DNA of 64,000 bases, taken from assembly GCF_947568905.1 (NCBI RefSeq), contig NC_079170.1, positions 14,136,001 through 14,200,000 on the forward strand, in the 5' to 3' direction. Below are positions 221 to 56,838 of the stretch, piece by piece; position 1 is the stretch's first letter, and the number at the start of each line of letters is the position of its first letter. Source of the stretch: Ostrea edulis (Eukaryota). Below the pieces are notes generated by a model that saw nothing but the letters and a program-made list of their open reading frames with translations, searched no databases and was not told where the DNA came from. Made by a program: the position numbers and the translations under genes.

Positions 221-263
221 ATGCATCTGGTGCATCAAAATTGATATCGTATAAGTTTTACAT
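221..263 (+). repeat. 3' fragment of the hammerhead/retrozyme repeat (no catalytic core)
   Basis: atgcatctggtgcatcaaaattgatatcgtataagttttacat matches the sequence following the cleavage site in the 23233-23763 copies. Confidence 0.7.
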
Positions 264-5522: not shown

Positions 5523-5791
5523 ACTTCATTACTAGCTTGAAAATACGGATGCATATTTAATTGCTATGATAGAAATTCATTTCAAAATTAAGGATTATTT
5601 CCCTCATGCATAGCTCTTATCCTTAGACGAATTTGACTTCACATTTTGGCACTCTGTTTTTCACTAAAGTAACTCTAACAAGTGGTGTTATTTCGGATTT
5701 CATACATTTCGATTGAGCATCACTGAAGAGACATTATTTGTCGAAATGCGCATCTGGTGTATCAAAATTGGTACCGTATAAGATTTTACAT
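5523..5791 (+). ncRNA. Retrozyme-family repeat, partial monomer with an intact type I hammerhead core (about 5716-5760)
   Basis: gcatca-CTGAAGA-gac attattt gtc-GAAA-tgcgca-TC-tggtgt; stems I and II pair; predicted cleavage after 5754. Confidence 0.8.
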
Positions 5792-7810: not shown

Positions 7811-9124
7811 AACAAGAGGCCCGGTATGCCACTTAAGCAATACAAGAACTGGAACATAGGCCACCTTGGCCCTACCATTGTTCAGTTGTTGGAGCTTTAG
7901 AATAGTTTGCATTTAATCTAATTAAAATTAGATCGTATGACCCGCTCATCTACTATCGCTACACCAGTAGATGAGCGGATCATAGGATCTTTTATTCCCA
8001 CGAAAAATGTTGACCCCATATTGTGACCCCCTACTTAGCCCCAACAGCCACAACATAACTGAACATGAATTCACATAACACAGAATGCCTCAAAAACAAT
8101 TTGACTTGCATGATTTTGCTGTTCTGGATAATACAAAAGTCACAAGGTCATATATCACGGTATGATACGAAATGCGTTGCCATAAGAATTATGTAAAAAG
8201 TGTATGGAAGTTCTATTTTGAATAGTTGAGGAAATTTTGAATAGGTAAGATCTTTTATCAAACCTAGGTCAAACTTCTAGATAACGACCACAAGGTAAAG
8301 CATTGAAGTAAATCAAAGTCTTGTCATAAATGTATATACATACAAAATATAAAAGTTCTTCCTTAAATAGTCTAGGGAATATTGATTACGCCAGGGTTTT
8401 CATAGAAAGTAGGTCAAAGTTACTAGATCAAAAATGTTTTTGTCAAAAGGTCGTCTTGTGATAAAGTATTTAGATGCAAAATATAAAAGCCCTACCTTGG
8501 ATACTTCTGAAAATGTTTAATAGAATACACTTTCTTAAAAGTAGGTCAAATGCCAATCTACTAGGTCTAAGGTTATAATATGAAATAAAAGGTATTGTCA
8601 TAAGATTTTTATGAAACAAATCTACTCTATTCCAGAAAGGTTTCATGTAAATGTAAACTTTTTTGGGTCAGTAATCCAAAGGAAGGATTTTAAAGACGTT
8701 TTCATATAAATGTATATTACCATGTGAAACGTCGATCCCCTTTCGTTGCTCCACGCTACCCCCGGGGAGCATAATTGTAACAAACTTGAATTTGCATTAT
8801 GTCAGAAAACTTTCATGTACATGTAAACTTTTCTGGTCTATTGGTTCTTGAGATAATTTTTGAAAGACCCCACAAAAAGACAAAAATATTTTAGTGATTA
8901 TCTCCCCTTTGAAGGGGACATGCTCCTTCATTTGAACAAGTCTGAACCCACTTCACCCAAGAATGCTTTTCGCCAAGTGTGGTGAAAACTGGTCCAATGG
9001 TTCTGGAGAAGAAGTCGAAAATGTGAAAAGTTTACAGACAGATAGATAGATAGATGACCAGAAGACGGACAACTGGTGATAAGAAGAAAAGCTCACTCGG
9101 GCTTTCAGCTCAGGTAAACTAAAA
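7811..9124 (+). mobile_element. Non-autonomous Helentron-associated (HINE/pearl-like) element
   Basis: Starts aacaagaggccc, has satellite-like internal sequence, a gacagatagataga microsatellite near the 3' end and a terminal agctcac..gctttcagctcaggt.a.ctaaaa hairpin followed by an A run. This architecture is typical of oyster HINEs (recognised from memory, not searched). Confidence 0.65.
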
Positions 9125-9700
9125 TATGTTCAGTCATATTTCACATAGGCAATACAAAAACACACTGGACAAAAAGTCACAGGACAAAACATCAAAGAAA
9201 AAACTGACCATTGACAAAAATGTTACAGTTATAAATTTCATAAAAGTGGGACAAAGAATAAAAGGACAGACAGTCATAATTGATAAGAAAATATTGATTT
9301 TGATTCATCAAACTCAAACTTTAAATTTTAGTAATGATAATTTGATGATCAAATTTTTATTCCTTTTATCATGTTTATTATAGAATAAGAATTAGATTTT
9401 GAAAAAGGAGTGAGAAAAAACAAGTAGCAAGTGAAGTCATATAATAATTGTTAAAGAAACAAGTTCACGTTTCTTTTTTCAATATTGAAAGTGCTAAGTG
9501 TGGCATAAAGAAAGCCCTGCAACATTTTGTTCTTTTTTTTTCTTTTACCAAGCAATACTATCTCTAGAGGTAGAATAATATTTCAGAGAATTCAAATTGG
9601 ATTTCAATAATTCATTTAATAGCCAGGTTTAATCAAACACCGTATCAGAGTTTCAACTTTGTAGGTTTCTCAATAGGTAAATTTCTTAAATTTGTTAAAT

Positions 9701-11389
9701 TTAGCACGAAATACACCAGCCGGAGAATGCCACTCTCATATTGACGGAGCTACAAATAGATCCAACAGGGGTATAATTAGGTCTGGTTCTGATCCCAACT
9801 GAGTCTCCCTGATTCACATCAACGACGACGACACCGGTGACGGCGTTATACGTATTCGATCCTTGGTTATAAGTCACCCCAAATGGACTGCTATTGACAG
9901 TCATTTCGATGGGAAAGTATGAATTACCGCACGCAAAAGTTGTCCACGTGAAGACGTAAACTCCAGACACAGGGGGAGTGAAGAAACCCGTGTGCTTGTT
10001 GTAGCCATTTCCCAAATTAGTGACAACATGATCATAGACAAGAATATGATGTGCTCCGGGGTCGGTTTCTGTATGAGACATATAGGCATAAAATGCTATC
10101 GTTCCTTCTACAGCTCTTCCAATAGCTGGTAAACCTAGAAAAACACTATTTAGTGAGGATTGCGTTACTGCAATAACCGATAGCAGAATAAAAACACTAG
10201 CTGTTTTAAGTTACAGGGCCAATCATTACTGGTTGCAAAATACTACTACTTCCTTATCAATCCATAGTAGATGTAATAAGGTTTCTTGTATGCTAGAAAC
10301 AAATGACAAAACATCAAAGAAACGCACAGCAATGTTTTTTTGTTTTTTTTTTTTTTTTTTTAGATTGTACGCTGACACTTGTACTACTCAGACACAGACA
10401 AGTACTGACCTTAATCTTAAATGATTATGTTACCTTTAAGGAGACCCGATACGCTAACCCGATATAATTTGGGTATATAAAACCACGCCTGTCATGTCAC
10501 TCAAATGGTAATGAAACGGTACTGAAGATGATATATCGTTGCTGGTTTTTGATATGAAATCTTACAAAATTTTAGATTTTGCAGAAAAGACAATAATAGA
10601 AACGTAATCGTTTACATTTGAACCCATCCTTACGAGTTGATATTTTCACTCATACAATCTCTGATTAGCATTACCTCTTGAGTACACAAATGTGTACCCA
10701 CAGGACATTTAGAAATAAATGCTATAATATGTAAACCAGGGTCAGATAATTGAAACTCTTCTGTATTTACCGGTGTGCAGTGTATCGGGATTCCTTAAAA
10801 TGAAACATATATGACAAATTAAGCATTGGATTTCCTAATCACCTACCGGTAACAAAATCAAATAATCTTGCAGTGAATATGACTTGTTGATAATTCAAGA
10901 AATCTAATTCGAATAATTCACTTTCAAAGGAATAAGGATATACAATTATGCATTTACTCAGTGTGGAATAGTACCCACCAAAAGCTGTACATATGACTTA
11001 CGAATATTTCATACATAAAACATGCAAATATGAATAGAAAAAAAATATACTTGAAGGGTCAATTCTAAAGTTTGAGTTGTGTTCTTACCCAAAATATTTC
11101 TTTTTTCCAGTGTTGACACATAAGGTGGCGTGGTTTTATTTTCGCCTTTTGCATTCATGTCCTTCCAATCCAAAAGAGTTTTCTTTAAATGATCAATTTC
11201 GGTTCCTTGTTTGTGAACTAGTTCCTCCAAATTCTTCATCATTTTCCCCTGCCTATTCACAATCGTGTTAAGTGTTTCTTCATGTCTCTGACGGCGTACT
11301 CCAACAACCGTAACCATGTCACAAGTTGTCAGAATGAGTGAGTTGATGAAAATTATACCAATAAGTGAAACTTGTGAACAGACGACCAT
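9701..11389 (-). CDS. C1q domain-containing protein (signal peptide, coiled coil, gC1q), about 244 aa; exons 11389-11089 and 10134-9701
   Basis: Phase-1 donor TGG|GTAAGA at 11089/11088 joins phase-1 acceptor TTCTAG|GT at 10134, giving ...KRNILGLPAIGRAVEGTIAFYAYMSH...YDHVVTNLGNGYNKHTGFFTPPVSGVYVFTWT...VVVDVNQGDSV...AFSGW; these are gC1q hallmarks. Confidence 0.88.
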
Positions 11390-12887
11390 GACGATGTGTT
11401 TTAATAATCTTCCAAGTTATCTGCAATATTTATACGTATTTGCAGACTGGTCTTAAAATTCTGCACCTGCTATGACGATAAATTAAAAGATTATTTCTTG
11501 AACTCCTTCGATTATCACAGAGCGGCCTACCTACCAATCTGATGCACCTGCATGCGAACCCTTTGTTTAACTTTTCAGTTTTCCCAGCCTCTCTTCACTC
11601 GTATGCCAACCTTTTGATGAGGCGACTGGAACGTCATCATATGAAAAATTCTGGATGCACTGACTAAAGTCATCTCATTTTCAACGTCTCAACAAATTTC
11701 ATAAACTTCTCCAAGATGATTATAGCCTGATCATTCTCCAGATTATTTTAAAACAATATTTATCAAATAAACAATATTAGTTTATGGGATTGGGCATCAG
11801 ACTTAGCCTATATTTTTCATGTTATGAATTCCAGACGTTCGTTTGATAATTTCGTCTCTCCTACAGCTGTATTTTTTTTTCATAGTAATTGTACCTTTAA
11901 ACCTTACTCACTAGTTTCACAGGCTATTTTATAAGATAACATACCGGCTCACAGGACAGATTGCTAATTAATTTTCCCTACGTATCCCCTGTATAGTAGT
12001 ATTAGCTGCTATAATTGATTTCTGTACAATAGTACAAACTTATTACCTACTATAAGTGGTCCCTGGACAGCAGCATTAACTGATACAATTGTTTTCTGTA
12101 TAGCAGTAGTAACTATCATAAGTGATCACTGTACAACGGCATTAACTACTATAGGTGAACATATCAAATATCAATTATGTCTTACACGGCGAATTGTGCG
12201 GCGTGGAATATTTCGGTTGACACAGGATAATTAACACTTTAATTAATCACTTGACACTCTTCATTTTTATTTCCGGAACATGCTTTCTGACAAAAACTTG
12301 TCGGTTTGTTGTGCCAGATCATTTATCATTCCTCCTACAACTTACCTGGATTAAAACAGACGAGGCTGTTTTTAGACACAATACAACACGTAACTAATGA
12401 GATAATCCACGAACACAATCCTAAACTATCTGATCGGGTTGATTTATTTGTCTCTTTACAAATACTACATAACAATCACCTGCACGTGAAATCGTCCAAC
12501 ATTTGTCCATTGATCGAGTTTCTCACAGTAATAACGCATGCGTGCGTACCTTAGAATTGTACGTATACAAACAGCATTGTATTCACCATTATTGATAGGC
12601 CGTTTGAATACAGGAACTTTGTCTGACTCAGTCTGATAAATGATAATTTTTTGCCATTTTAACCGCAAATGGAAGAGAAAGCCAGTGTCTAACGGACTGC
12701 AACTTATAACAGTAGGTGTGAAATCACTATGCATGATGTGTGTAGGCACGTCCAGCAATGCTATAAAGACTCTTTAAGACTGGGTTAAAATCAGAGCTTG
12801 TGATATAATTCTTAGAGTTTTCATAATTTTATTTTGGAGGGTTGTCTCAAAATATATCTACTAGTAAACGCATAGGGAGTCTTAACA

Positions 12888-14692
12888 ATGGGAAAACTAT
12901 CAACAGTATTTAATATCTTAGCTATATTTACCAACGTTGCTTTCTCACAATCAAAATGCGCAAAAAGACCATTTTATATGAAGTCTTACTTATTTCACTC
13001 CGAAGACTGTTCCATGTACTATATCTGTTTTAATGGACGAGGATTTCTGATGAAGTGCGACAACGAAGAAGTTTTCGATATCGAGTCCACGTCATGTGTT
13101 CGAAGAGGATCGGAAATGGACAAGTGTAAGTATTTAATTTCAAATTAATTTCATCATGATACATGTGTTGTTTATTGATTACGCTGTGACTGTTAGACGT
13201 TGACGACCCAAGTAACTTATACATCCAGATATTTAGATTCTCGTACCACGGTTTGAATTCAAGTTATCATCGTTACATGCATATACTTGTGAGTTAAAGT
13301 AACAATTGGTTTTAGTTCTGCTTGACCATGATAGCTAGGAGGAAATGTATACATACCAGGTATTATACGGTAAAAAATATGGAGTTGAAACATTGTGAAG
13401 TATTGTGTAGTTGTAATGCGATACGTGCATGCAACTGTTTACAATCATGTAATTATTTGTTGCGAAAAATTAACATAATTACCACGGTTCAGAGATAAAT
13501 TTCCTTACTTGTTACTCTACACTTATAGGAATGACCTACTGTTATTCAGAACTTTTTATCGACAATCAATTGCTGCTGTACAACAGTAATAGTCTGTATA
13601 TTTAACAGCCAATCATCTTAACTATTCATTATTTTCAAAAATCTGCAGGTCTATGCCAGCAAAATACCTCTAATCATGACGACATTACTTTGCATCAACA
13701 GGTTCTTCACATTTCGATAAAGAATCCCTTCGTTGTTCAGCGTACGACACCGGATTACTTCCTGATACTGAGAGTTGTGCCAAGTATTTTGATTGTTCCG
13801 GCAAGTCACGTGGTAAACCTACCCCACGTGAATGCCCATATCCGTATCTGTTTGATTCCAAGTTGAAGTCATGTCGATATTTTACAGAAGTGACTTGTGG
13901 AGATAGACCAGAACCTAAGAATCCATGTACGTGAGACATTACTACTCTTCATAACCTCCATTCCTTCAAATTATTAATATCATCTAATCTCAATTATATT
14001 GTAAATAAAACAATTCTATTTACTTTCGATTCATTTAACTATCTACTCGAAACGTAAATTGACGTCTCAACAGAACGAAATTATGCCAATATGTAGACTG
14101 AAAGTTACTGTAATATCTTGAAAGGTGACTGAATGGAATACCATTGTTTAACCCTGCGCTCTGTGTACAGAAAGATTGCTAGAAGTCTGTTTACTACATT
14201 AAGGTACCATGTCGATATATCATCATTGATCGACAGGGGATGCTTACTCCTCTTAGACACCTGATACCATGTTTGCCGAGCTTTTTATTTTGAATTCCTT
14301 GCGGGGTGTATGAGATTCATCACTGTTCGTTACATTCGCCTTTCATCATCATTTATGTATATTCCAGAAATGCTTTATCAAAGTAGACTGTTACATCGTG
14401 ATGCTTATCAATTAGTGAAGCGATGATGAATTGTCATAATATGTTCTACTTTCCAGGTGACTATGATTTGAAACCTTGTAAGGACAACGACTGTTCTGCC
14501 TGTCATTCAAACTATCCCAGTTGTGTCGATTTCCCTGATGGTTTGAACCCTTGGAGGGGTCGGGAGTGGACACCACATTTCATATTGTGTTCAGGGGAGA
14601 GAGTTCTCTTCCACGGTGTGTGCTCCGATTCGCAGATTTTCCACCCAGACCAATTAAAATGTGTAGAATCGAATGTACACAATCTTAGTTAA
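12888..14692 (+). CDS. Secreted chitin-binding protein with three peritrophin-A/CBM14-like domains, about 233 aa; exons 12888-13125, 13702-13926, 14457-14692
   Basis: Signal peptide; C..DCSMYYIC..KC..SC..KC; CSAYDTGLLPDTESCAKYFDC..ECPYPYLFD..C..TCGDRPEPKNPC; CDY..C..C..CH..YPSC..PDGLNPWRGRE. All introns GT-AG, phase 1-1. Confidence 0.9.
14230..14347 (+). mobile_element. Naiad-type PLE 3' fragment in intron 2 of the chitin-binding gene
   Basis: atcgacaggggatgcttactcctc...tatgagattcatcactgttcgttac..cctttcat. Confidence 0.7.
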
Positions 14693-15518
14693 AACCTTTA
14701 AAATACATGGTTTATTGTATATGTTGCATAAATTATTTCTATTTATTACCATTGTCCTATTGTACATGTTTAATGAATTTGGATCTCAAGTTTATATAAT
14801 ATATTCCTTAGTTTATTGTACAATCAATGTATTGTTATATGAATGTTCAAGTCACGAGAATTCCAATTTAGTGTTTGTATATTTTGTGTGTTTTGTGTTC
14901 TTGATATGTGGCATAATTCATGGTTTGATTCTTTGTATATTTTAATGTCTATGACTCATTAGTTACATATTTGTGGACCTACTCAATATCAACTATTACA
15001 TGTGTGTATGCTTATTAGGATGCTTACCCGTTGTTAATTAAAACCTTCAAAAGAAGGATTTCTAATGCATCTCTTAATTTATTTCCATTTAAGAATAGTC
15101 ATCGTATAGTATTCATTTAATGCATTTAGATAACAAGTGTTTCTATTCGTCTCTTATCTAATTTTAGCATTTACTCCATTTTCATGTATTATTGATATAA
15201 TAGGAATGTTCCAGTTTTGAGAATTTCAATATTGATATAGATAGTTTAAAAATGCGTCATTGCTATACTTGACTCTACAATGTAATTATATTTATTTGAC
15301 TGCTTTGAATGTTACATGTTTGATTCATATCTGATGTACAAATAGACTCACAATCAATATCTGCTAACACAAAATCTTGATAAAAAATGTAAAATAAAGA
15401 ATAATGATTTATTTGATAAATACAAAGTTTAGTTTATTTTCTCCACAATGACTTTATTTTTAGTCCTTTTCAAATATTTTCTTGAATTATAATCATATAA
15501 AATGACAAGTAATATATG

Positions 15519-18910: not shown

Positions 18911-21900
18911 CTATATGGAACAAACAACACATGACACAAGATTATGCTGTCTGTATGGCGGACACGGCAGAGATCCACATATGGTTCTTACGGGGTAAAA
19001 TAACCTTCCATTATCATCATTTTCAGAACCTTCTATGGCATCTGGGTTGTCATCTAGGCACAAGTATTCCGAGACATGATATTTATACCTATCTGCTGTC
19101 AGAATACCTGAATACTGTTTTCGCCAATGCACCGGACACGACCTTTTCCCAGGGATCATGATGGTGGAAGAAAGTTTGACTTGGCAGACAGTGCATGGGA
19201 CGTCCTCTTGTATTCGAACATGGCCTACGTTTAATTGATACTCGCCACCATAAAGATAGGCATAGTCGTCATCTACTGGCACAGAAACACCATACGGTAG
19301 GCTTTCTGGATCATGAGGCATACAGAGTGTGTTAGCGCCGTTCCCACTGTTTCCATAATCACTTCCGGCAGTAAACCCTGTGTAAATATTGTATTCGTAT
19401 AAACGTAGCAGCGAATACCCAGTTTCTGAGTAAGGTTTAATGATGTATGAATAAAAGATAAATTCTCATATTTAAGATTAATGCTCTGTTGTTTACATTG
19501 TGAGTTTTCGAAACGATGCGTCTCATATGTATCAAACACATTATGGCTACATGCTCCTTTAGCAATGCTTAATTTCAAAACATATTTGCTATTCGAATTC
19601 GATACTACGTGTTTAAAAACACAGTTGCACTTAATTTTCCTTCCGGTGCTAAATAATTATATATATTTGCATTGATCATTCATATAATTGAATTCTGGGG
19701 ATGAGTTAGTGGTTTATGTAAAACAGTGGTATATTGCCTTATTGATTTGATTGACCTCTTTTAAATATTTCATGCGCGGACCTCGGGGTAAATATGAAAA
19801 AAAAAATAAATAAAAAGAAATTAAACGTTACCATTATATACCATCTGTGTTTCACTCACGTTTGGACAGTTGTTCTTTCCCCAAATTGTAAAAGTTGACC
19901 CTGTTGAAAACAGAACGTTAATTATTCTTTTAGAAGAATATTATAAAATACATCATTCCTGAAACACCAGCATTAGGTGCAATTCATTTTTGTCATTTAT
20001 TGTTGTATGTAAGCAATATTTTATTGAAACAAAGGATATGATTAAGAATGAGTATTAAAGCAAATGTAATCCTTTCATTCAACGTAATTTGTTTCTTGAT
20101 TTGTCTTTTCACTTCACTTCAATGATCCTTCATGCATTTAGATTTGCCTCCAGTTGCAACTGGATGTCAATAAATGTATGAATTGGGGCTGTGGGGTGAT
20201 TTTTTTATCCTGACAATAACCGCGAGACGGAATGGAACCACAGTTCTTAAGGTCTCATTCACAAGACCTGCGAATCTTATCAACGCTAAGCTTTGGACAA
20301 AATAGCAGTCATTACATGTTTTTACGTCTTAGGTGAAACAGGGAAGTTAACGCATCCATGGTACGAACGGGATTTTAATCCACGACCTTCAATACACAAA
20401 TATGCAGAACTCAAATTAGATTATCTAACATTTTGACAAATATAACGCGTGACACCATGGGGAAACGTTTGCATTAGCAACCCTCTAGAATTTCTTAGGA
20501 CGATATTTCTTTAAATATTTCGTCGATAATTCTTTGTTGTATACAAACAGTTTCAGGTTCGCTGAGATTTCATTCTTCTGAGGTGCTCCATGTCTCTCTG
20601 CCTCTCGTGAGATAACCACAATCCCAGACATTACGAGAAAGACATATCATTCCTGGAAAAATCTTTGTCATAAGAAAATTCATCAGCGGACTTTGATGAG
20701 GAATTGGGTACCATTGTTATTTATAATGCGACCGTAAAGAACAAACAAAACACAAAATTTCTCCGAGACAAAGTAAATCAATCAACCTCAGAAAGCAGTA
20801 GATCTTCCAGTAAGTCTTATAACTCACGACAAATTGCGAAGAAACGTAGCTCCAGACGTTGTAGCCATGACTCAAGATCCGCAGACAACGCATGGGATCC
20901 GTCCAATTTTTAATGCCTCGATTGTCACTTTCGCAAATCCTGGAACAACACAGCTTTTCAAGGCTTTAAACGTTCGTCCTACCCAACCAGAAGTAGATGA
21001 CAAAGCAGTCAGAGATAAAGCTTTGAGAATTTTCCGGAAGATTGAGACTAAAGGAGCACTTCTCTAGGAATGACAAGGATTATACTGACATTCCCTCCAA
21101 TCTTACAAAACGATCTAAGCTAGAAAAACTCTACAAACTTAAGCGTCCCTGATATCCTCCATCTGGAAAATATGGGGCCTTGGAATCTTATGTCGACGCA
21201 GCTAAATTTGATATTAAAGATATCTTGTCTAAAAGATCATGTATTTCAGACTTCAACAAAGATGAAAGAGCTACTCTTGAAAAGCTTAATCCACATACAG
21301 CTAGGTGACAAGCGATTTTACGAAAAGCTGGATTCAGATCCTACAGGGGAATGTTCAGCCTTCATAACTGAAACTGAACACTACGTTTACGAAGCAGCTC
21401 TGTCCTGCTTACTGCATATCGGGACAATTCTACTTTCTCCCAAAAATCCACAAGGAAGGCACGCCACGTAAGTGTCATCTGACATTCCACGAAGATAATT
21501 TCTGAATTCCTCGACTTACGTATCCGTCCTCATGTAGAAGATTGACCGTCATATCTCAGACATCCTTGATTACATTAAAAAGCACTCCCTCTGAACTTCC
21601 CGACAGCACAGTATTGATGACTGTGAACGTCACATCCTTGTATACATAAATTCCACACGAGGAGAGCATTGAAGCTTGAGAGGAAATCTTTAACATGAAG
21701 TCTATTCAGAGACTTCTGAATCGGTAGTCAAGCTCCTGGGACATGTTCACAAGTTGAATAGCTTCATGGTGAACGGCAAGAATTGCCTACAATAAATTAG
21801 TGAAACGGCAAAAGACACTACTTGTTCTACGTATGATGAGTTTTTAAAGGCCACTGACAAACAAATTGAAGGCGCAATGGTTTCAACAATCTCGTTCATA

Positions 21901-24900
21901 GTCAGCATTTCGCAAATTTTATGGTCGTCATCACAATCTAGTGTGCCAATACAACCTATCTTTAGGTCAACTGCTGTCTGATGTTTTTCATATCAATTTC
22001 TTGGCACACTGATTTTAAATACGGTCGAAAAGGGATGCTTACTCCTCCTAGACACCTGATCACATCTTTCGAATACCCAGGGGTCTTTGTTTTCCCAACT
22101 CTCTACTTTGTATTGCTGATAGGAGTTATGATATTGATCACTGTTGGTTATTTTCACTTTTCAAATTTATTCAAAAACTTCTACGTGAGTAGAAAAATAT
22201 ATTGCTGTGGCCTTCGATTCGACATTTAGATATATCGACGACGTATTATTTATTAACTTTAAGACATTTCATTGATATGTCGATTCGATATATCCCGGTG
22301 AACTCGAAATAAAAGACACCACAGAGTCGTCAAATTCTGCTTCATACTTAGATATCTACTATTGAAAGTAAATATTAATAGCAAACTAACAACTCAGCTT
22401 TATGACAAACGGAATTACTTCAGCTTCTCCATCGTCAACTTCCCATATTTATGTAGCAATATTTCATTATCACCTGCATATGGTGCTTATATATCTCAAC
22501 CGATTCAATACACAAGAGCTTCTTCTGCTTATGGTAAGTTTTAAAATCGAAGCAGGCTACTGACAGACAAGTTGATGGTACAGGGATTCTAACAGTCTCG
22601 TTTAAAATCAGTATTTTTCAAATTCTATGATCGTTATAATGATTTAGTTTGCCAATACAACATAGCATTGGGTCAAATGTTGTCTGACGTGTTTCATACC
22701 GATTGTTAAGCTGTTTTTGACACACTGATTTTGACTACAAACAACTCCGTATACCTGACCAAGATATAAGGCTCACGGCGGGTGTGACCTTTCGAAAGAG
22801 GATGCTTAATTATTCTTCTGGTATGTCCAGGGGTCTGTGTTTGCCCAACTATTGATTTTGTATTGCTTATTGGAGTTATGAGATTGATCTCTGATTGTTA
22901 TTGTCTAGTCATTGAATAAACGGTTTAGTCTTAAATCGATAACTATTCAACTGTTGGTTTAAAGCTTGCAAATAGGAGAAAACTGAAGAGTGTACGTAAT
23001 CTTTTTTTTACATTTTAAGAAAAATACATTTCATGATTTGCAGTATACACTGAGGTGATATAGCCACATGGTTATTTCTATCACGTTTATTGAATCGCAC
23101 AGCATTTTGCATGCACGAATAATCCCGAGCATCACGTCACTCATTTCTTCATCCTGTTCACTGCTACATGTCGACTGTATTAGAACAGCAAGTTTTTTTT
23201 TCAGATACAAATTCCTCTGACAGTTAACGGCGTACATCCTTGGACGAATTTGGCTCCACTTGTTTGGCATGCTGTTTTGGCTATATTTAGATCTAAAACT
23301 TCATAGTTATTTCGGATTTCAAACATTTCGGTTGAGCATCACTGAAGAGACATTATTTGTCGAAATGCGCATCTGGTGCATCAAAATTGGTACCGTATAA
23401 GTTTTACATTATGACCCCTGGGTCGAGGCCTCTGCTGGTGGACTGTTAGTCCCCGAGGGTCTCTACAGCCCAGTAGCTAAGTACTTCGTTACTAGCTTGA
23501 AAATACGGATGTATATTTAATTGTTGTTATAAAATTTAGAAATTCATTTCAAAATTAAGGATTATCTCCCTCATGCATAGCTCTTATCCTTGGACGAATT
23601 TGGCTCCACTTGTTTGGCACGCTGTTTTTGGCTATATTTAGCTCTAAAACTTCATAGTTATTTCGGATTTCAAACATTTGGGTTGAGCATCACTGAAGAG
23701 ACATCATTTGTCGAAATGCGCATCTGGTGCATCAAAATTGGTACCGTATAAGTTTTACATCCTAGAGGTACAGTCGTTCTTAATGAATTAGAATGAAATT
23801 CCACTAAGCCAATGTTTTATACATACTTTTCTCAACTTTAGAAATGATGTTCATTCCAAAGGGCTTATCTGTGGATCATTTGTCTTTAGCCGGTTTTGGT
23901 CCTCGACCAAAAGTGCAAAGATGCATCAAAAAGTAGGTGTCACAAAAAGAATAGTGTTCTTTTATATCTTCCGAAAAGGTAGTAGTATTTTCTACTTGGA
24001 ACTGATTTAAAACTCTGTTGGAACCCATTTCCAACTTTTTATCAGGTATATCACTACCAGGTGAAAGGTCAAAGTTTAATTTGCTTAAGACAATGCACGT
24101 TCATTTTTCTCATATTGTAAATTCCAAAATAACATTGCTAAGGACATTATTTATATCCTTAACCTCGCTAACTTCTTTTGATTTAATTTATGTCAGAAAA
24201 ATTCATCAACTGAATCCATTACCCTTCTTTCATGAAATAAATTAAAGTTTATTCGGTATATACAAATATACATACATATATATTAAGGATAAGCTTATTT
24301 CCAATGGGGTCCTTTGATGTACGGATATTTGCGCTAGGGGGTCATTGATGTGGAAGGAAACCTGGGTACCCGAAGGAAACCCATGTGTCCGAGCGGGCGA
24401 CCACCATACCCTCTCACATACAACCACTGCCGATCAAGGGGATTGGACTCGGATCGCAGCAGTGAGAAACGAGAGCGCTATCTCTGTGCTACCCGGACAT
24501 GTGATGAAAAAACCTGTGTAAGAGCCCTTTTTATAGACAATACTACTGTTGAATAGGTGAATGGTTACATGTAACAGACCATATCTGTCACCTGACTTTA
24601 TTACGAGCACTCTCATTTTATTTCAGCAAGTGAATATTTGAATGGTTTCTATCAGCAGGGGCTAGATTAAGGGATAAATAAGTCGATGGTGTTGAATAGT
24701 TCAGAGAAAACATCCCCACCTCTGGACTTCAGCCCTCGGTGACATTGATTTCTCTGAACTATTTAACACCATCGACTTATTTATCCATAACATATATATG
24801 TACACAGAATTCTTCACTCCCATAATTAGCCGAGTAGAAAAACAACATAGTCATTATATCCGTTGATGAAATTTTCATGCTTGGCAATCGTTGTTTATAA

Positions 24901-43024: not shown

Positions 43025-43145
43025 ATGTAAAACTTATACGGTACCAATTTCATGCACCAGATGCGCATTTCGATCAATAATGTCTCTTCAGTGATGCTCA
43101 ACCGAAATGTTTGAAATCCGAAATAACAATGAAGTTTTAGAGTTA
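43025..43145 (-). repeat. Retrozyme-family fragment, minus strand; hammerhead with weakened stem II
   Basis: Minus strand: gagcatca-CTGAAGA-gacattattgatc-GAAA-tgcgcatc-tggtgc; stem II gac/atc is mismatched. Confidence 0.8.
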
Positions 43146-55385: not shown

Positions 55386-56639
55386 GGTTCTTGGTTTTTT
55401 AAAATATCGGAGTTGAACCTAATGTAAGTTATAACGTTAAGTTGTTTCGTACTACTTATTAAGTAAAAACTCTGCAAACTGCATTTATAAGATGTTTCAT
55501 CCCACATTTAAAGTCAGTTTACATTGTAGGTGTGTGGTTAGAAATCTGTTGGCCATTTTTAGACAATGAGTGGGTCGGAAGTGAATATTTTAGAACACGA
55601 TGAAACGCTAGAGTGACTTTCCAATTTTCATTCATTAGATAAAGAAATCGATGTGCTTAGGACGATGCCGGGAAACAGGGGTCTTCGTTACCATTTTTGG
55701 AATGTGAGGTGTATTTCTTACATCGGCACGTTGATATCAGAATAAAGATAACGTTCTCATTAATAACCCACTCAGTGCTAATTGATACGTTAAAATTGAC
55801 TTTCACTTAATGTCATTTTCTACTAATAAACCCTTTTCTTAGATATGTAACAAACAAAATGATTTTTTATGAATACAATGAACAAAATTTACCGTATGGA
55901 ATACAATTTCCTCCACCGATTTCTTAATTATTTTCAAAATAGTGAGCGAAATGTTTAAATTAGGAATGGAGGAGCAATATATAATTCCCTATTATTTGTT
56001 TTCGCAATTTTATATTTACATTTTTTACATCCACATGAAACTAAACAATACATAGAAACATTTCCTTCCACTTTCTCCTTAAATGATTTATGTGATGCTT
56101 TGATGATGTTTTGAAAATTACCTTTGCCGATGAATGAATTGGCATACCAAGATATTCTCTCTATTTCTTAAACTAGATTTTCCCCTAGATAAATTCAATA
56201 AGTCATCCGACCTAAGATCAATACACGATGTTAATTATTTTTTCTTATTATCTACCATTTGATAATTATCTTCATCAAAATACTTCCTCTATACACACAT
56301 GTATATGTAACACGGTGTACTGCATTAATATCTTCAGAAATCGTGTGTTTTTAACTTATTTGCTAATCCGATTTTCGCAGTGCCAACCGAAGTATGGCTG
56401 CTCAAGCTATATTTGTTACCATCAATATAAAACCAAACAATTCGGAATCGACATAAAGTATTTTGATGGGGAAACTCAATTCATAATCAAATTAAGTTTA
56501 AAAGAGATTGATATGAATATACAGAAAAATTGATATGAGGAAACTAGTCTGAACAATTTTATGCTTTGCAATTGCACACTATAGAGTTACTAGCCTGGAA
56601 ATACGAATGTATATTTAATTCTTGTGATAATATTGAGAC

Positions 56640-56838
56640 ATTATTTCCAAAATTAAGGATTATCTCCCTCATGCATAGCTCTGATCCTTAAAGAAAATTT
56701 GACTCCAGTCTTTTGCACCTTTTTTTAGTTCTTACAATTCTAATGTTATTCCGGACTGTCAATACTGCGGCTTGAACATAAATGGAGATACATTATTTGT
56801 CGAAATGCATCACAAATGGCACCGTATAAGTTTTGCAT
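56640..56838 (+). repeat. Highly decayed retrozyme-family copy (core destroyed)
   Basis: aaaattaaggattatctccctcatgcatagctc...acattatttgtcgaaatgcatc...gcaccgtataagttttgcat; CTGAAGA is lost. Confidence 0.65.

What the first reader, a model, noticed from the sequence alone, without database searches (positions are those of the whole stretch)
23233..23763. Hidden ribozyme system: tandem retrozyme with two hammerheads bracketing a 351-nt self-excising unit
Seen: two copies of gcatca-CTGAAGA-gac(N7)gtc-GAAA-tgcgca-TC-tggtgc, with every hammerhead core nucleotide present, stems I and II paired and an AUC cleavage triplet. Predicted cuts after 23373 and 23724 release exactly 351 nt. Stem III is the self-complementary octamer AUGCGCAU, too short to fold stably as a monomer. 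Established: such minimal type I hammerheads cleave as dimers ('double hammerhead', as in newt satellite 2 and Penelope-associated ribozymes), and animal non-LTR retrozymes, including roughly 350-400-nt units in Mytilus mussels, give abundant circular RNAs. Inference: a read-through transcript could pair its two ribozymes, excise the monomer and circularise it. The copy lies antisense in intron 1 of gene B1, so it would not cut the host pre-mRNA. No ORF track reveals this element.
Basis: partly seen in the sequence, partly recalled or inferred. Interest (0 to 1): 0.88.

Follow-up and report, generated by a model that had tools for sequence, protein, structure and literature searches.

The report
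Oyster-type hammerhead retrozyme repeat copy
This is one ordinary copy of a very abundant 351-base mobile repeat of a mollusc genome that carries a hammerhead self-cutting RNA motif, a kind of element already described in mussels, corals and salamanders.

Summary
Two hammerhead-type motifs lie at 23336-23379 and 23687-23730 (+), with predicted cuts after 23373 and 23724, 351 nt apart. Rfam Hammerhead_1 aligns end to end at 31.2 bits (cut-off 34), but only when the motif is searched alone.

The element is not a private system. It is a 1.5-unit insertion (23236-23760) of a young dispersed family. The genome holds about 15,000 near-exact ribozyme motifs, and the window holds six more copies.

All 30 loci examined share one 3' end, 36 nt past the cut site, with a variable 5' truncation and 1-3 full units. 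That is the partial-tandem-plus-tail architecture of Penelope-like elements, so I file it as a non-LTR retrozyme, a non-autonomous Penelope-like derivative.

Folding favours a double hammerhead for two isolated motifs but not within the whole 525-nt transcript. A related family in a marine metagenome contig keeps the ribozyme core and stems while the rest has diverged (P = 1.7e-4). A more distant variant shows compensatory stem changes.

RNA libraries of three studies hold the unit, but with family-consensus letters, not this locus's private variants. Cleavage and circles are untested, and no autonomous partner was found.

The scan has already flagged this family elsewhere in this genome: 279 first-reader notes, none followed up.

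The parts
23236..23409 (+). 5'-truncated upstream unit (positions 177-351 of the 351-nt unit counted from the insertion boundary); acts as a pseudo-LTR
23410..23760 (+). full 351-nt unit, ending at the family's fixed 3' terminus ...GTTTTACAT
   Evidence: 100% reference unit; the same 3' end in all 30 genomic loci
23336..23379 (+). hammerhead motif 1 (helix I 6 bp, core CUGAAGA, helix II GACA/UGUC, GAAA, palindromic AUGCGCAU, C17); predicted cut after 23373
   Evidence: Rfam RF00163 31.2 bits, model positions 1-45 of 45
23687..23730 (+). hammerhead motif 2, identical except one loop-2 base; predicted cut after 23724
23374..23724 (+). 351-nt RNA that double cleavage would release (predicted, not shown)
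   Evidence: geometry; no reading frame longer than 56 codons and 39% G+C
23725..23760 (+). 36-nt 3' extension past the second cut site, equivalent to the 30-40 bp 'tail' of Penelope-like insertions
   Evidence: PMC8557442
5522..5791 (+). older 5'-truncated single copy of the family (87% identity) with an intact ribozyme motif at 5717-5760
43025..43145 (-). 5'-truncated single copy (93% identity); helix II weakened
28528..28682 (+). 5'-truncated copy (87% identity) with a decayed ribozyme core
56586..56838 (+). old copy (74% identity) with stem III deleted
223..263 (+). 41-nt 3'-terminal fragment of the family
27504..27588 (+). internal fragment of the family (unit positions 121-205)
26322..26633 (-). 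context: ORF holding the first exon (signal peptide plus coiled coil) of the host gene; the exon/intron boundary was not determined
   Evidence: 51% identical to the paralog's exon at 31776-32063
18911..19321 (-). context: ORF holding the last exon (Cys-rich C-terminal domain, no Pfam match) of the host gene

Best explanation
The stretch 23236-23760 is one insertion of a young, very abundant, non-coding retroelement family of a bivalve mollusc. The genome has about 895 Mb on ten large contigs and is probably an oyster; that identification is inference. The family belongs to the animal non-LTR retrozymes, that is, non-autonomous derivatives of Penelope-like elements (PLEs).

Shown here:
- Each 351-nt unit carries a complete type I hammerhead motif.
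- Insertions have a fixed 3' end 36 nt past the ribozyme cut site, a variable 5' truncation and often more than one unit.
- The ribozyme core and stems are kept between diverged families.
- The unit is present in RNA libraries.

Inferred from the mussel, coral and axolotl relatives:
- A transcript spanning two ribozymes pairs their palindromic stem III strands into a double hammerhead and cuts after each AUC.
- A PLE reverse transcriptase/GIY-YIG endonuclease copies the circle, or an uncut multimer, from a fixed priming site, giving more-than-unit copies.

This particular copy is antisense in an intron. It has both ribozymes intact but carries five private mutations, and it is not shown to be expressed.
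For: Motif:
- All core nucleotides and three helices are present.
- Rfam Hammerhead_1 aligns over model positions 1-45 of 45 at 31.2 bits, E 9.6e-7 in a 67-nt search.
- The 44-nt motif with up to 3 mismatches occurs 15,075 times genome-wide, against 0 for the reversed control.

Folding:
- For two isolated 44-mers the double hammerhead is the minimum-energy state (-27.3 against 2 x -7.8 kcal/mol).

Comparative evidence:
- Related family in contig L064: 38-39 of 39 core and stem positions are identical, against 225 of 307 elsewhere (Fisher P = 1.7e-4). Its differences from the window copy fall in loop 2, plus one helix III change in the second L064 motif.
- Variant in L063: 2 compensatory and 3 wobble changes, with 60 of 60 cells paired, against 13-45% in the slid controls.

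Retroelement behaviour:
- Full-unit matches listed are 96-100% identical.
- 45 full units differ from their consensus by 2.1% on average.
- All 30 loci end at ...ACAT, start at variable positions and hold 1-3 full units.
- Six more copies lie in the window, five of them ending at the fixed 3' end.
- There is no poly(A), no long reading frame, and G+C is 39%.
- PLE insertions are described as 5'-truncated partial tandems with a 30-40 bp tail (PMC8557442).
- At least 1,102 GIY-YIG candidate places show that PLEs are abundant in this genome.

RNA:
- Contigs covering the unit occur in RNA libraries of three studies.
- In one run, two contigs together close a 351-word cycle.

Relatives:
- Mussel retrozymes of 350-390 bp give abundant circular RNAs and cleave in vitro (PMC7229834).
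- Vertebrate retrozymes are related to PLE pseudo-LTRs (10.64898/2026.07.22.740005).
Against: - The Rfam score is 2.8 bits below the gathering cut-off, and the motif is missed in window-scale and genome-scale searches.
- In the full 525-nt transcript the minimum-energy fold (-122.8 kcal/mol) uses an alternative hairpin, AUGCGC/GUGCAU, that buries the cut site. The double hammerhead costs 4.9 kcal/mol more.
- The circle is no more stable than shuffled sequence (z = 0.09), unlike the 'highly self-paired' circles reported for relatives.
- Within the family the ribozyme is not clearly better kept than the rest (1.6% against 2.1%).
- Contigs cannot show RNA ends, strand or circularity. Some run into other flanks, which indicates read-through.
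- The RNA contigs carry consensus letters, not this copy's private ones.
- The one canonical PLE family I could read has no hammerhead in its 670-nt 3' region and no similarity to the unit, so the mobilising partner is unknown.
- Minimal hammerheads of PLEs cleave poorly in vitro (PMC4209133).
Confidence: 0.78

Rival explanations
1. The hammerhead motif is a vestige. The family is a SINE-like or pseudo-LTR-derived repeat that spreads as an ordinary linear transcript, and the ribozyme does not cut in vivo. The RNA seen in libraries is read-through from host genes.
For: The active fold is not the minimum-energy state in context. The Rfam score is below the cut-off. There is no extra conservation inside the family. 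Some RNA contigs continue into foreign flanks. PLE minimal hammerheads have low in vitro activity (PMC4209133). Every insertion includes the uncut junction.
Against: The ribozyme core and stems are kept between families that are 73-79% identical elsewhere, and a distant variant shows compensatory changes. The similar mussel element cleaves and forms circles (PMC7229834).
Confidence: 0.14
2. The family is mobilised by a LINE with a specific 3' end rather than by a Penelope-like element.
For: The fixed 3' end and 5' truncation are also the signature of LINE target-primed reverse transcription. No PLE sharing the 3' end was found. The authors of PMC7229834 leave LINEs open as candidates.
Against: More-than-unit partial tandems, a 36-nt extension past the ribozyme site, the absence of poly(A) or a microsatellite tail, and the hammerhead itself are PLE traits (PMC8557442; PMC4209133).
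Confidence: 0.06
3. The locus is a local tandem duplication or a satellite fragment made by DNA-level slippage or unequal exchange, not by retrotransposition.
For: The locus shows head-to-tail repeats with a 351-nt period.
Against: Thousands of dispersed copies lie on all large contigs with the same 3' boundary and different 5' boundaries. One locus (L003) has a 19-nt target duplication.
Confidence: 0.02

Closest known systems
Non-LTR retrozymes of the mussel Mytilus galloprovincialis (Cervera & de la Pena 2020, PMC7229834)
   Same: Both are bivalve elements with a type I hammerhead in a non-coding, AT-rich repeat of about 350 nt. Both have thousands of copies (about 5,000 motifs in the mussel; 8,000-15,000 here), co-exist with PLEs, and lack the classical loop1-loop2 contacts.
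   Different: Sequence relatedness could not be tested because no mussel sequences are held. The mussel circles are reported as highly self-paired, whereas this unit folds no better than shuffles. Here most copies are dispersed and 5'-truncated rather than long arrays. Cleavage and circles are shown for the mussel only.
Newt satellite 2 / axolotl retrozyme hammerheads (dimer-type)
   Same: Both have a short palindromic helix III that predicts action as a double hammerhead, and a unit of about 330-350 nt.
   Different: The host is a vertebrate and the families are different. Dimer dependence is shown experimentally there (PMC7229834) and only predicted by folding here.
Penelope-like elements and their pseudo-LTR hammerheads (PMC4209133, PMC8557442)
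   Same: Shared traits are 5' truncation, a partial tandem forming a pseudo-LTR, a 30-40 bp tail, a hammerhead near the 3' end, a G10.1-C11.1 pair and a palindromic helix III.
   Different: There is no RT/GIY-YIG reading frame. The hammerhead is of canonical size (helix I 6 bp, helix II 4 bp, no bulge after A9) rather than the 'min-HHR' form. No sequence link to an autonomous PLE has been found yet.
Plant LTR retrozymes
   Same: Both are non-autonomous, have ribozymes that bracket the transcribed unit, and are proposed to use circular RNA intermediates.
   Different: The plant elements have type III hammerheads, real LTRs, a PBS and PPT, 600-1000 nt, high G+C, and are mobilised by Gypsy elements.

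Membership tests
Hammerhead ribozyme type I (Rfam RF00163) | Conserved core C3-U4-G5-A6-N7-G8-A9, G12-A13-A14, the A15.1-U16.1 pair, and H17 at the cut site | tested here: met
   CUGAAGA ... GAAA ... AUC is present in both motifs. All core columns match in the Rfam alignment.
Hammerhead ribozyme type I (Rfam RF00163) | Three helices with type I topology (open helix I, closed II and III) | tested here: met
   Helix I has 6 bp including one G-U. Helix II has 4 bp with G10.1-C11.1. Helix III is palindromic. No non-standard pair is marked, and 60 of 60 cells pair across 5 variants with 2 compensatory changes.
Hammerhead ribozyme type I (Rfam RF00163) | Score at or above the curated gathering cut-off (34 bits) | tested here: not met
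   The score is 31.2 bits, E 9.6e-7 in a 67-nt search. There was no hit at window or genome scale. The cut-off is a curation threshold, not a biochemical feature.
Hammerhead ribozyme type I (Rfam RF00163) | Self-cleavage at the predicted site | not testable with these tools
   This needs in vitro transcription. Contigs cannot show RNA ends.
Animal non-LTR retrozyme (PMC7229834) | Type I hammerhead inside short head-to-tail repeats of 150-450 bp, in multiple copies | tested here: met
   The period is 351 nt and there are 1-3 or more units per locus. Sixteen of the first 100 exact motifs lie in tandem pairs 348-353 nt apart.
Animal non-LTR retrozyme (PMC7229834) | Non-coding, G+C below 45-50%, no LTR/PBS/PPT | tested here: met
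   The longest frame in a trimer is 56 codons and G+C is 39%. There is no tRNA-like part.
Animal non-LTR retrozyme (PMC7229834) | Expressed as unit-length linear and circular RNA | tested here: inconclusive
   The unit is present in RNA libraries of three studies, and in one run the contigs close a 351-word cycle. Tandem transcripts or DNA carry-over would look the same.
Non-autonomous Penelope-like element | Insertion architecture: frequent 5' truncation, partial tandem (pseudo-LTR), 30-40 bp tail | tested here: met
   All 30 loci show a fixed 3' end, 5' starts at unit positions 84-326, and a 36-nt extension past the cut site (PMC8557442).
Non-autonomous Penelope-like element | Terminal sequence shared with an autonomous PLE of the same genome | tested here: inconclusive
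   The one canonical C-terminal GIY-YIG family I could read has no hammerhead and no similarity (score 24 against a shuffle mean of 22.4). Other PLE families, such as the one with 787-aa frames, could not be fetched.

The most novel reading that the evidence does not exclude
The family's insertion boundaries may be footprints of rolling-circle reverse transcription. cDNA synthesis would always start 36 nt downstream of the ribozyme cut site and always cross the joined cut site. The template would then be a ligated circle (or an uncut multimer), never the cleaved linear monomer. The enigmatic 30-40 bp 'tail' of Penelope-like insertions would be the segment between the hammerhead cut site and the priming site. 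With about 15,000 young copies, this family could make that long-proposed mechanism directly testable.
Probability: 0.3. Interest if true: 0.55.

Novelty: new member of a known kind. Interest (0 to 1): 0.3.

Why it matters
It adds a very young family of about 15,000 copies from another bivalve to the known animal retrozymes. The family has unusually clean insertion boundaries: a fixed 3' end 36 nt past the ribozyme site, and 5' ends that avoid the G+C-rich block. These boundaries could help decide how Penelope-like reverse transcriptases copy circular or multimeric RNA. For annotating this genome, it explains thousands of ORF-less repeats, many of them inside introns. For this one locus nothing special follows.

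Tried and rejected
- Rfam at the gathering threshold on the window found only a tRNA. At E up to 10 on 801 nt it gave no hammerhead. Genome-wide the best score was 25.6 bits, on a decayed copy of the same family. The motif scores only when searched alone.
- Tandem Repeats Finder reports nothing, because there are only 1.5 copies.
- Target-site duplications: one clear 19-nt case (L003) and no consistent duplication otherwise, none at this locus.
- Conservation of the ribozyme inside the family is uninformative because the copies are too young. Old copies in the window are simply decayed.
- Autonomous partner: 30 GIY-YIG loci were scanned with strict and relaxed hammerhead descriptors. Only an unrelated mini-element in L043 matched. 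The 3' region of the canonical PLE family shows no similarity.
- tRNA or other known RNA origin of the unit: none.
- The exact motif was absent from metagenome contigs and the relaxed pattern from viral contigs. The relaxed pattern gave 4 metagenome contigs, of which L066 was rejected because helix I does not pair.
- Literature search for the motif's letters returned only chance matches.
- The supplement of PMC7229834 holds no mussel sequences as text.
- The host-gene exons were searched one by one by reference.

Full report
**What is there.**
On the + strand, 23336-23379 and 23687-23730 read as follows:
- helix I 5' strand GCAUCA;
- core CUGAAGA;
- helix II GACA/UGUC around a 5-nt loop;
- GAAA;
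- the self-complementary UGCGCA flanked by A15.1 and U16.1;
- C17;
- helix I 3' strand UGGUGC.

The two motifs differ by one loop base. The predicted cuts fall after 23373 and 23724, 351 nt apart. The repeated DNA is 23236-23409 and 23586-23760, 97% identical. So the element spans 23236-23760 and holds 1.5 units. That is why Tandem Repeats Finder is silent. A pattern of core plus stem III gives 4 matches in the window against 0 in 100 shuffles.

**Is it a hammerhead?**
Rfam found nothing at the gathering threshold on the window. It also found nothing at E up to 10 on 801 nt. Genome-wide its best score was 25.6 bits, and that hit is a decayed copy of this same family. Searched alone, however, the motif aligns to Hammerhead_1 over all 45 model positions with no non-standard pair. 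The score is 31.2 bits against a cut-off of 34, E 9.6e-7. The earlier blanks were therefore filter losses. The model's own consensus for stem III is a loop-less palindromic octamer, the same shape as here.

Folding gives a mixed picture:
- Two isolated 44-mers have the double hammerhead as their minimum-energy state: intermolecular 8-bp helix III, helices I formed in trans, -27.3 against 2 x -7.8 kcal/mol.
- In the 525-nt transcript the minimum-energy fold (-122.8) instead uses a hairpin, AUGCGC/GUGCAU, that buries the cut site.
- The enforced double hammerhead costs 4.9 kcal/mol more, and two single hammerheads cost 7.5 more.

The active fold is accessible but not favoured. I read the competing hairpin as a possible off-state; that is inference.

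**Comparative support.**
Inside the family the copies are too young to inform. Forty-five full units differ from their consensus by 2.1% on average, and the ribozyme by 1.6%.

A relaxed pattern found related elements in metagenome contigs:
- L064 carries the same architecture, a partial unit plus a full unit with a 350-nt period. It is 73-79% identical in the body.
- The 39 core and stem positions are identical in 39 of 39 (first motif) or 38 of 39 (second motif), against 225 of 307 elsewhere. Fisher one-sided P = 1.7e-4. The differences from the window copy fall in loop 2, apart from one helix III change in the second motif.
- L063 has a more distant variant. It has two compensatory double changes and three wobble-compatible single changes, and none in the core.
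- Across five variants 60 of 60 cells pair, against 13-45% when the partners are slid.

This is a small sample, and one sequence supplies all the stem variation. Helix I was not part of the search pattern, so it counts as independent evidence. A G+C-rich block at the start of the unit is kept as well, so the ribozyme is not the only constrained part.

**What kind of element.**
- The 351-nt query gave 119 matches out of 866 first-look candidates on all large contigs. The full-unit matches are 96-100% identical.
- A 32-nt ribozyme pattern matches 8,136 times. The 44-nt motif with up to 3 mismatches matches 15,075 times. Both reversed controls give 0.
- Of the first 100 exact motifs, 16 lie in same-strand pairs 348-353 nt apart. 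Loci like this one probably number over a thousand; that figure is an extrapolation.
- In all 30 loci fetched, the element ends at the same ...GTTTTACAT, within 1-2 nt. That is 36 nt past the cut site. The 5' end falls at variable unit positions (84-326), and 1-3 full units are present.
- The window holds six more copies, five of them 5'-truncated and ending at the same 3' end.
- There is no poly(A), no frame longer than 56 codons in a trimer, 39% G+C, and no tRNA-like part.
- Target duplications are inconsistent: one clear 19-nt case and none at this locus.

Frequent 5' truncation, partial tandems that form pseudo-LTRs, and a 30-40 bp tail are the published hallmarks of Penelope-like insertions (PMC8557442). 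Hammerheads sit in their pseudo-LTRs (PMC4209133). Animal tandem repeats with type I hammerheads have been named non-LTR retrozymes; about 5,000 motifs in 350-390 bp repeats give abundant circles in mussel (PMC7229834). A 2026 preprint argues that they derive from PLE pseudo-LTRs (10.64898/2026.07.22.740005). This family fits all of that.

**The partner.**
PLEs are plentiful here, with at least 1,102 GIY-YIG candidate places. Most of the 30 loci I could read belong to one canonical family with a C-terminal endonuclease. Its 670-nt 3' region has no hammerhead and no similarity to the unit. The mobilising element is therefore unknown.

**RNA.**
Runs of 11 studies hold the unit's words. Contigs from RNA libraries of three studies lie on the unit and not on its flanks.

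In one small mollusc RNA run, a 377-nt contig (23384-23760) and a 34-nt contig (23380-23413) together make 351 words of 31 letters that close on themselves. The 31-letter word size of the contig builder is from my own knowledge. A circle would give this pattern, and so would a tandem transcript or DNA carry-over. Other contigs of that run leave the element into foreign flanks, which is read-through at other loci.

At 23680 and 23705, where this copy carries private changes, the RNA contigs show the family consensus. The RNA seen therefore comes from other copies. Contigs cannot show ends, strand or circularity.

**This locus.**
The two units differ at five sites, each a private departure from the family consensus. 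Two of them destroy a CpG. This fits two units that were identical at insertion and have since decayed by about 1.4%. Both ribozymes are intact.

The copy lies between two minus-strand ORFs:
- 26322-26633 encodes a signal peptide plus coiled coil and is 51% identical to the first exon of a neighbouring paralog.
- 18911-19321 encodes a Cys-rich C-terminal domain with no Pfam match.

The gene model rests on paralog homology, not on RNA.

**Mechanism and verdict.**
Shown:
- a complete, comparatively supported hammerhead motif;
- a young, dispersed retroelement family with PLE-type boundaries;
- presence in RNA libraries.

Inferred from relatives:
- double-hammerhead cleavage of transcripts that span two ribozymes;
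- ligation by a host tRNA ligase;
- copying by a PLE enzyme.

Every insertion includes the joined cut site and starts 36 nt beyond it. The template for integration therefore cannot be the cleaved linear monomer. A circle or an uncut multimer fits, as proposed earlier (PMC4209133, PMC7229834).

This is a new member of a known kind. The scan already holds 279 first-reader notes on hammerheads in this genome, none followed up.

Noticed in passing
unit positions 1-72 (window 23410-23481) and loci L001-L032: None of 39 independent insertions has its 5' end inside the G+C-rich (53%) first 72 nt of the unit, where about 8 would be expected (P about 1e-4 if starts were uniform). Six start just 3' of it, at positions 73-109. 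The same block is about 87% conserved in the related family of L064. It may be a structured block that reverse transcriptase either stops before or crosses whole, or an internal promoter.
   Followed up: partly
window 18911-19321, 26322-26633, 30853-31347, 31776-32063 (all minus strand): Two tandem paralogous two-exon genes encode a signal peptide, a coiled coil (weak COMP-like match) and a Cys-rich C-terminal domain of about 135 aa with no Pfam family. The intron of one has grown to about 7 kb through repeats.
   Followed up: partly
window 35520-35593 (+): A tRNA-Ala (anticodon CGC) gene, the only Rfam hit of the window at the gathering threshold (38.5 bits).
   Followed up: no
L043:2700-2900: Two head-to-head copies of a different short hammerhead element lie next to a 5'-truncated PLE reverse-transcriptase fragment. 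One copy has an intact motif: core CUGAAGA, helix II GGC/GCC, stem III A-GCGC-U, cut after UA, and a helix I entirely different from the 351-nt family. The other copy has a decayed core. The pair is flanked by GA and CA/TA microsatellites.
   Followed up: partly
G000:C1:110503255-110516013 and about 20 other places listed: A PLE family with many identical GIY-YIG matches in intact 787-aa frames, often in 3.7-kb tandems or inverted pairs. It is probably active and is a candidate partner of the retrozyme family. It could not be fetched.
   Followed up: no
L035-L062 (oriented positions 1807-2476): A canonical C-terminal GIY-YIG PLE family has a shared 670-nt 3' region that holds no CUGANGA and no GAAA, so no canonical hammerhead, contrary to what is usual for canonical PLEs.
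   Followed up: partly
L065:3638-4022: A 170-nt tandem repeat (3 copies) and LINE-like reverse-transcriptase fragments lie in the metagenome contig that also holds a copy of the related hammerhead element. The contig is probably from another bivalve.
   Followed up: no
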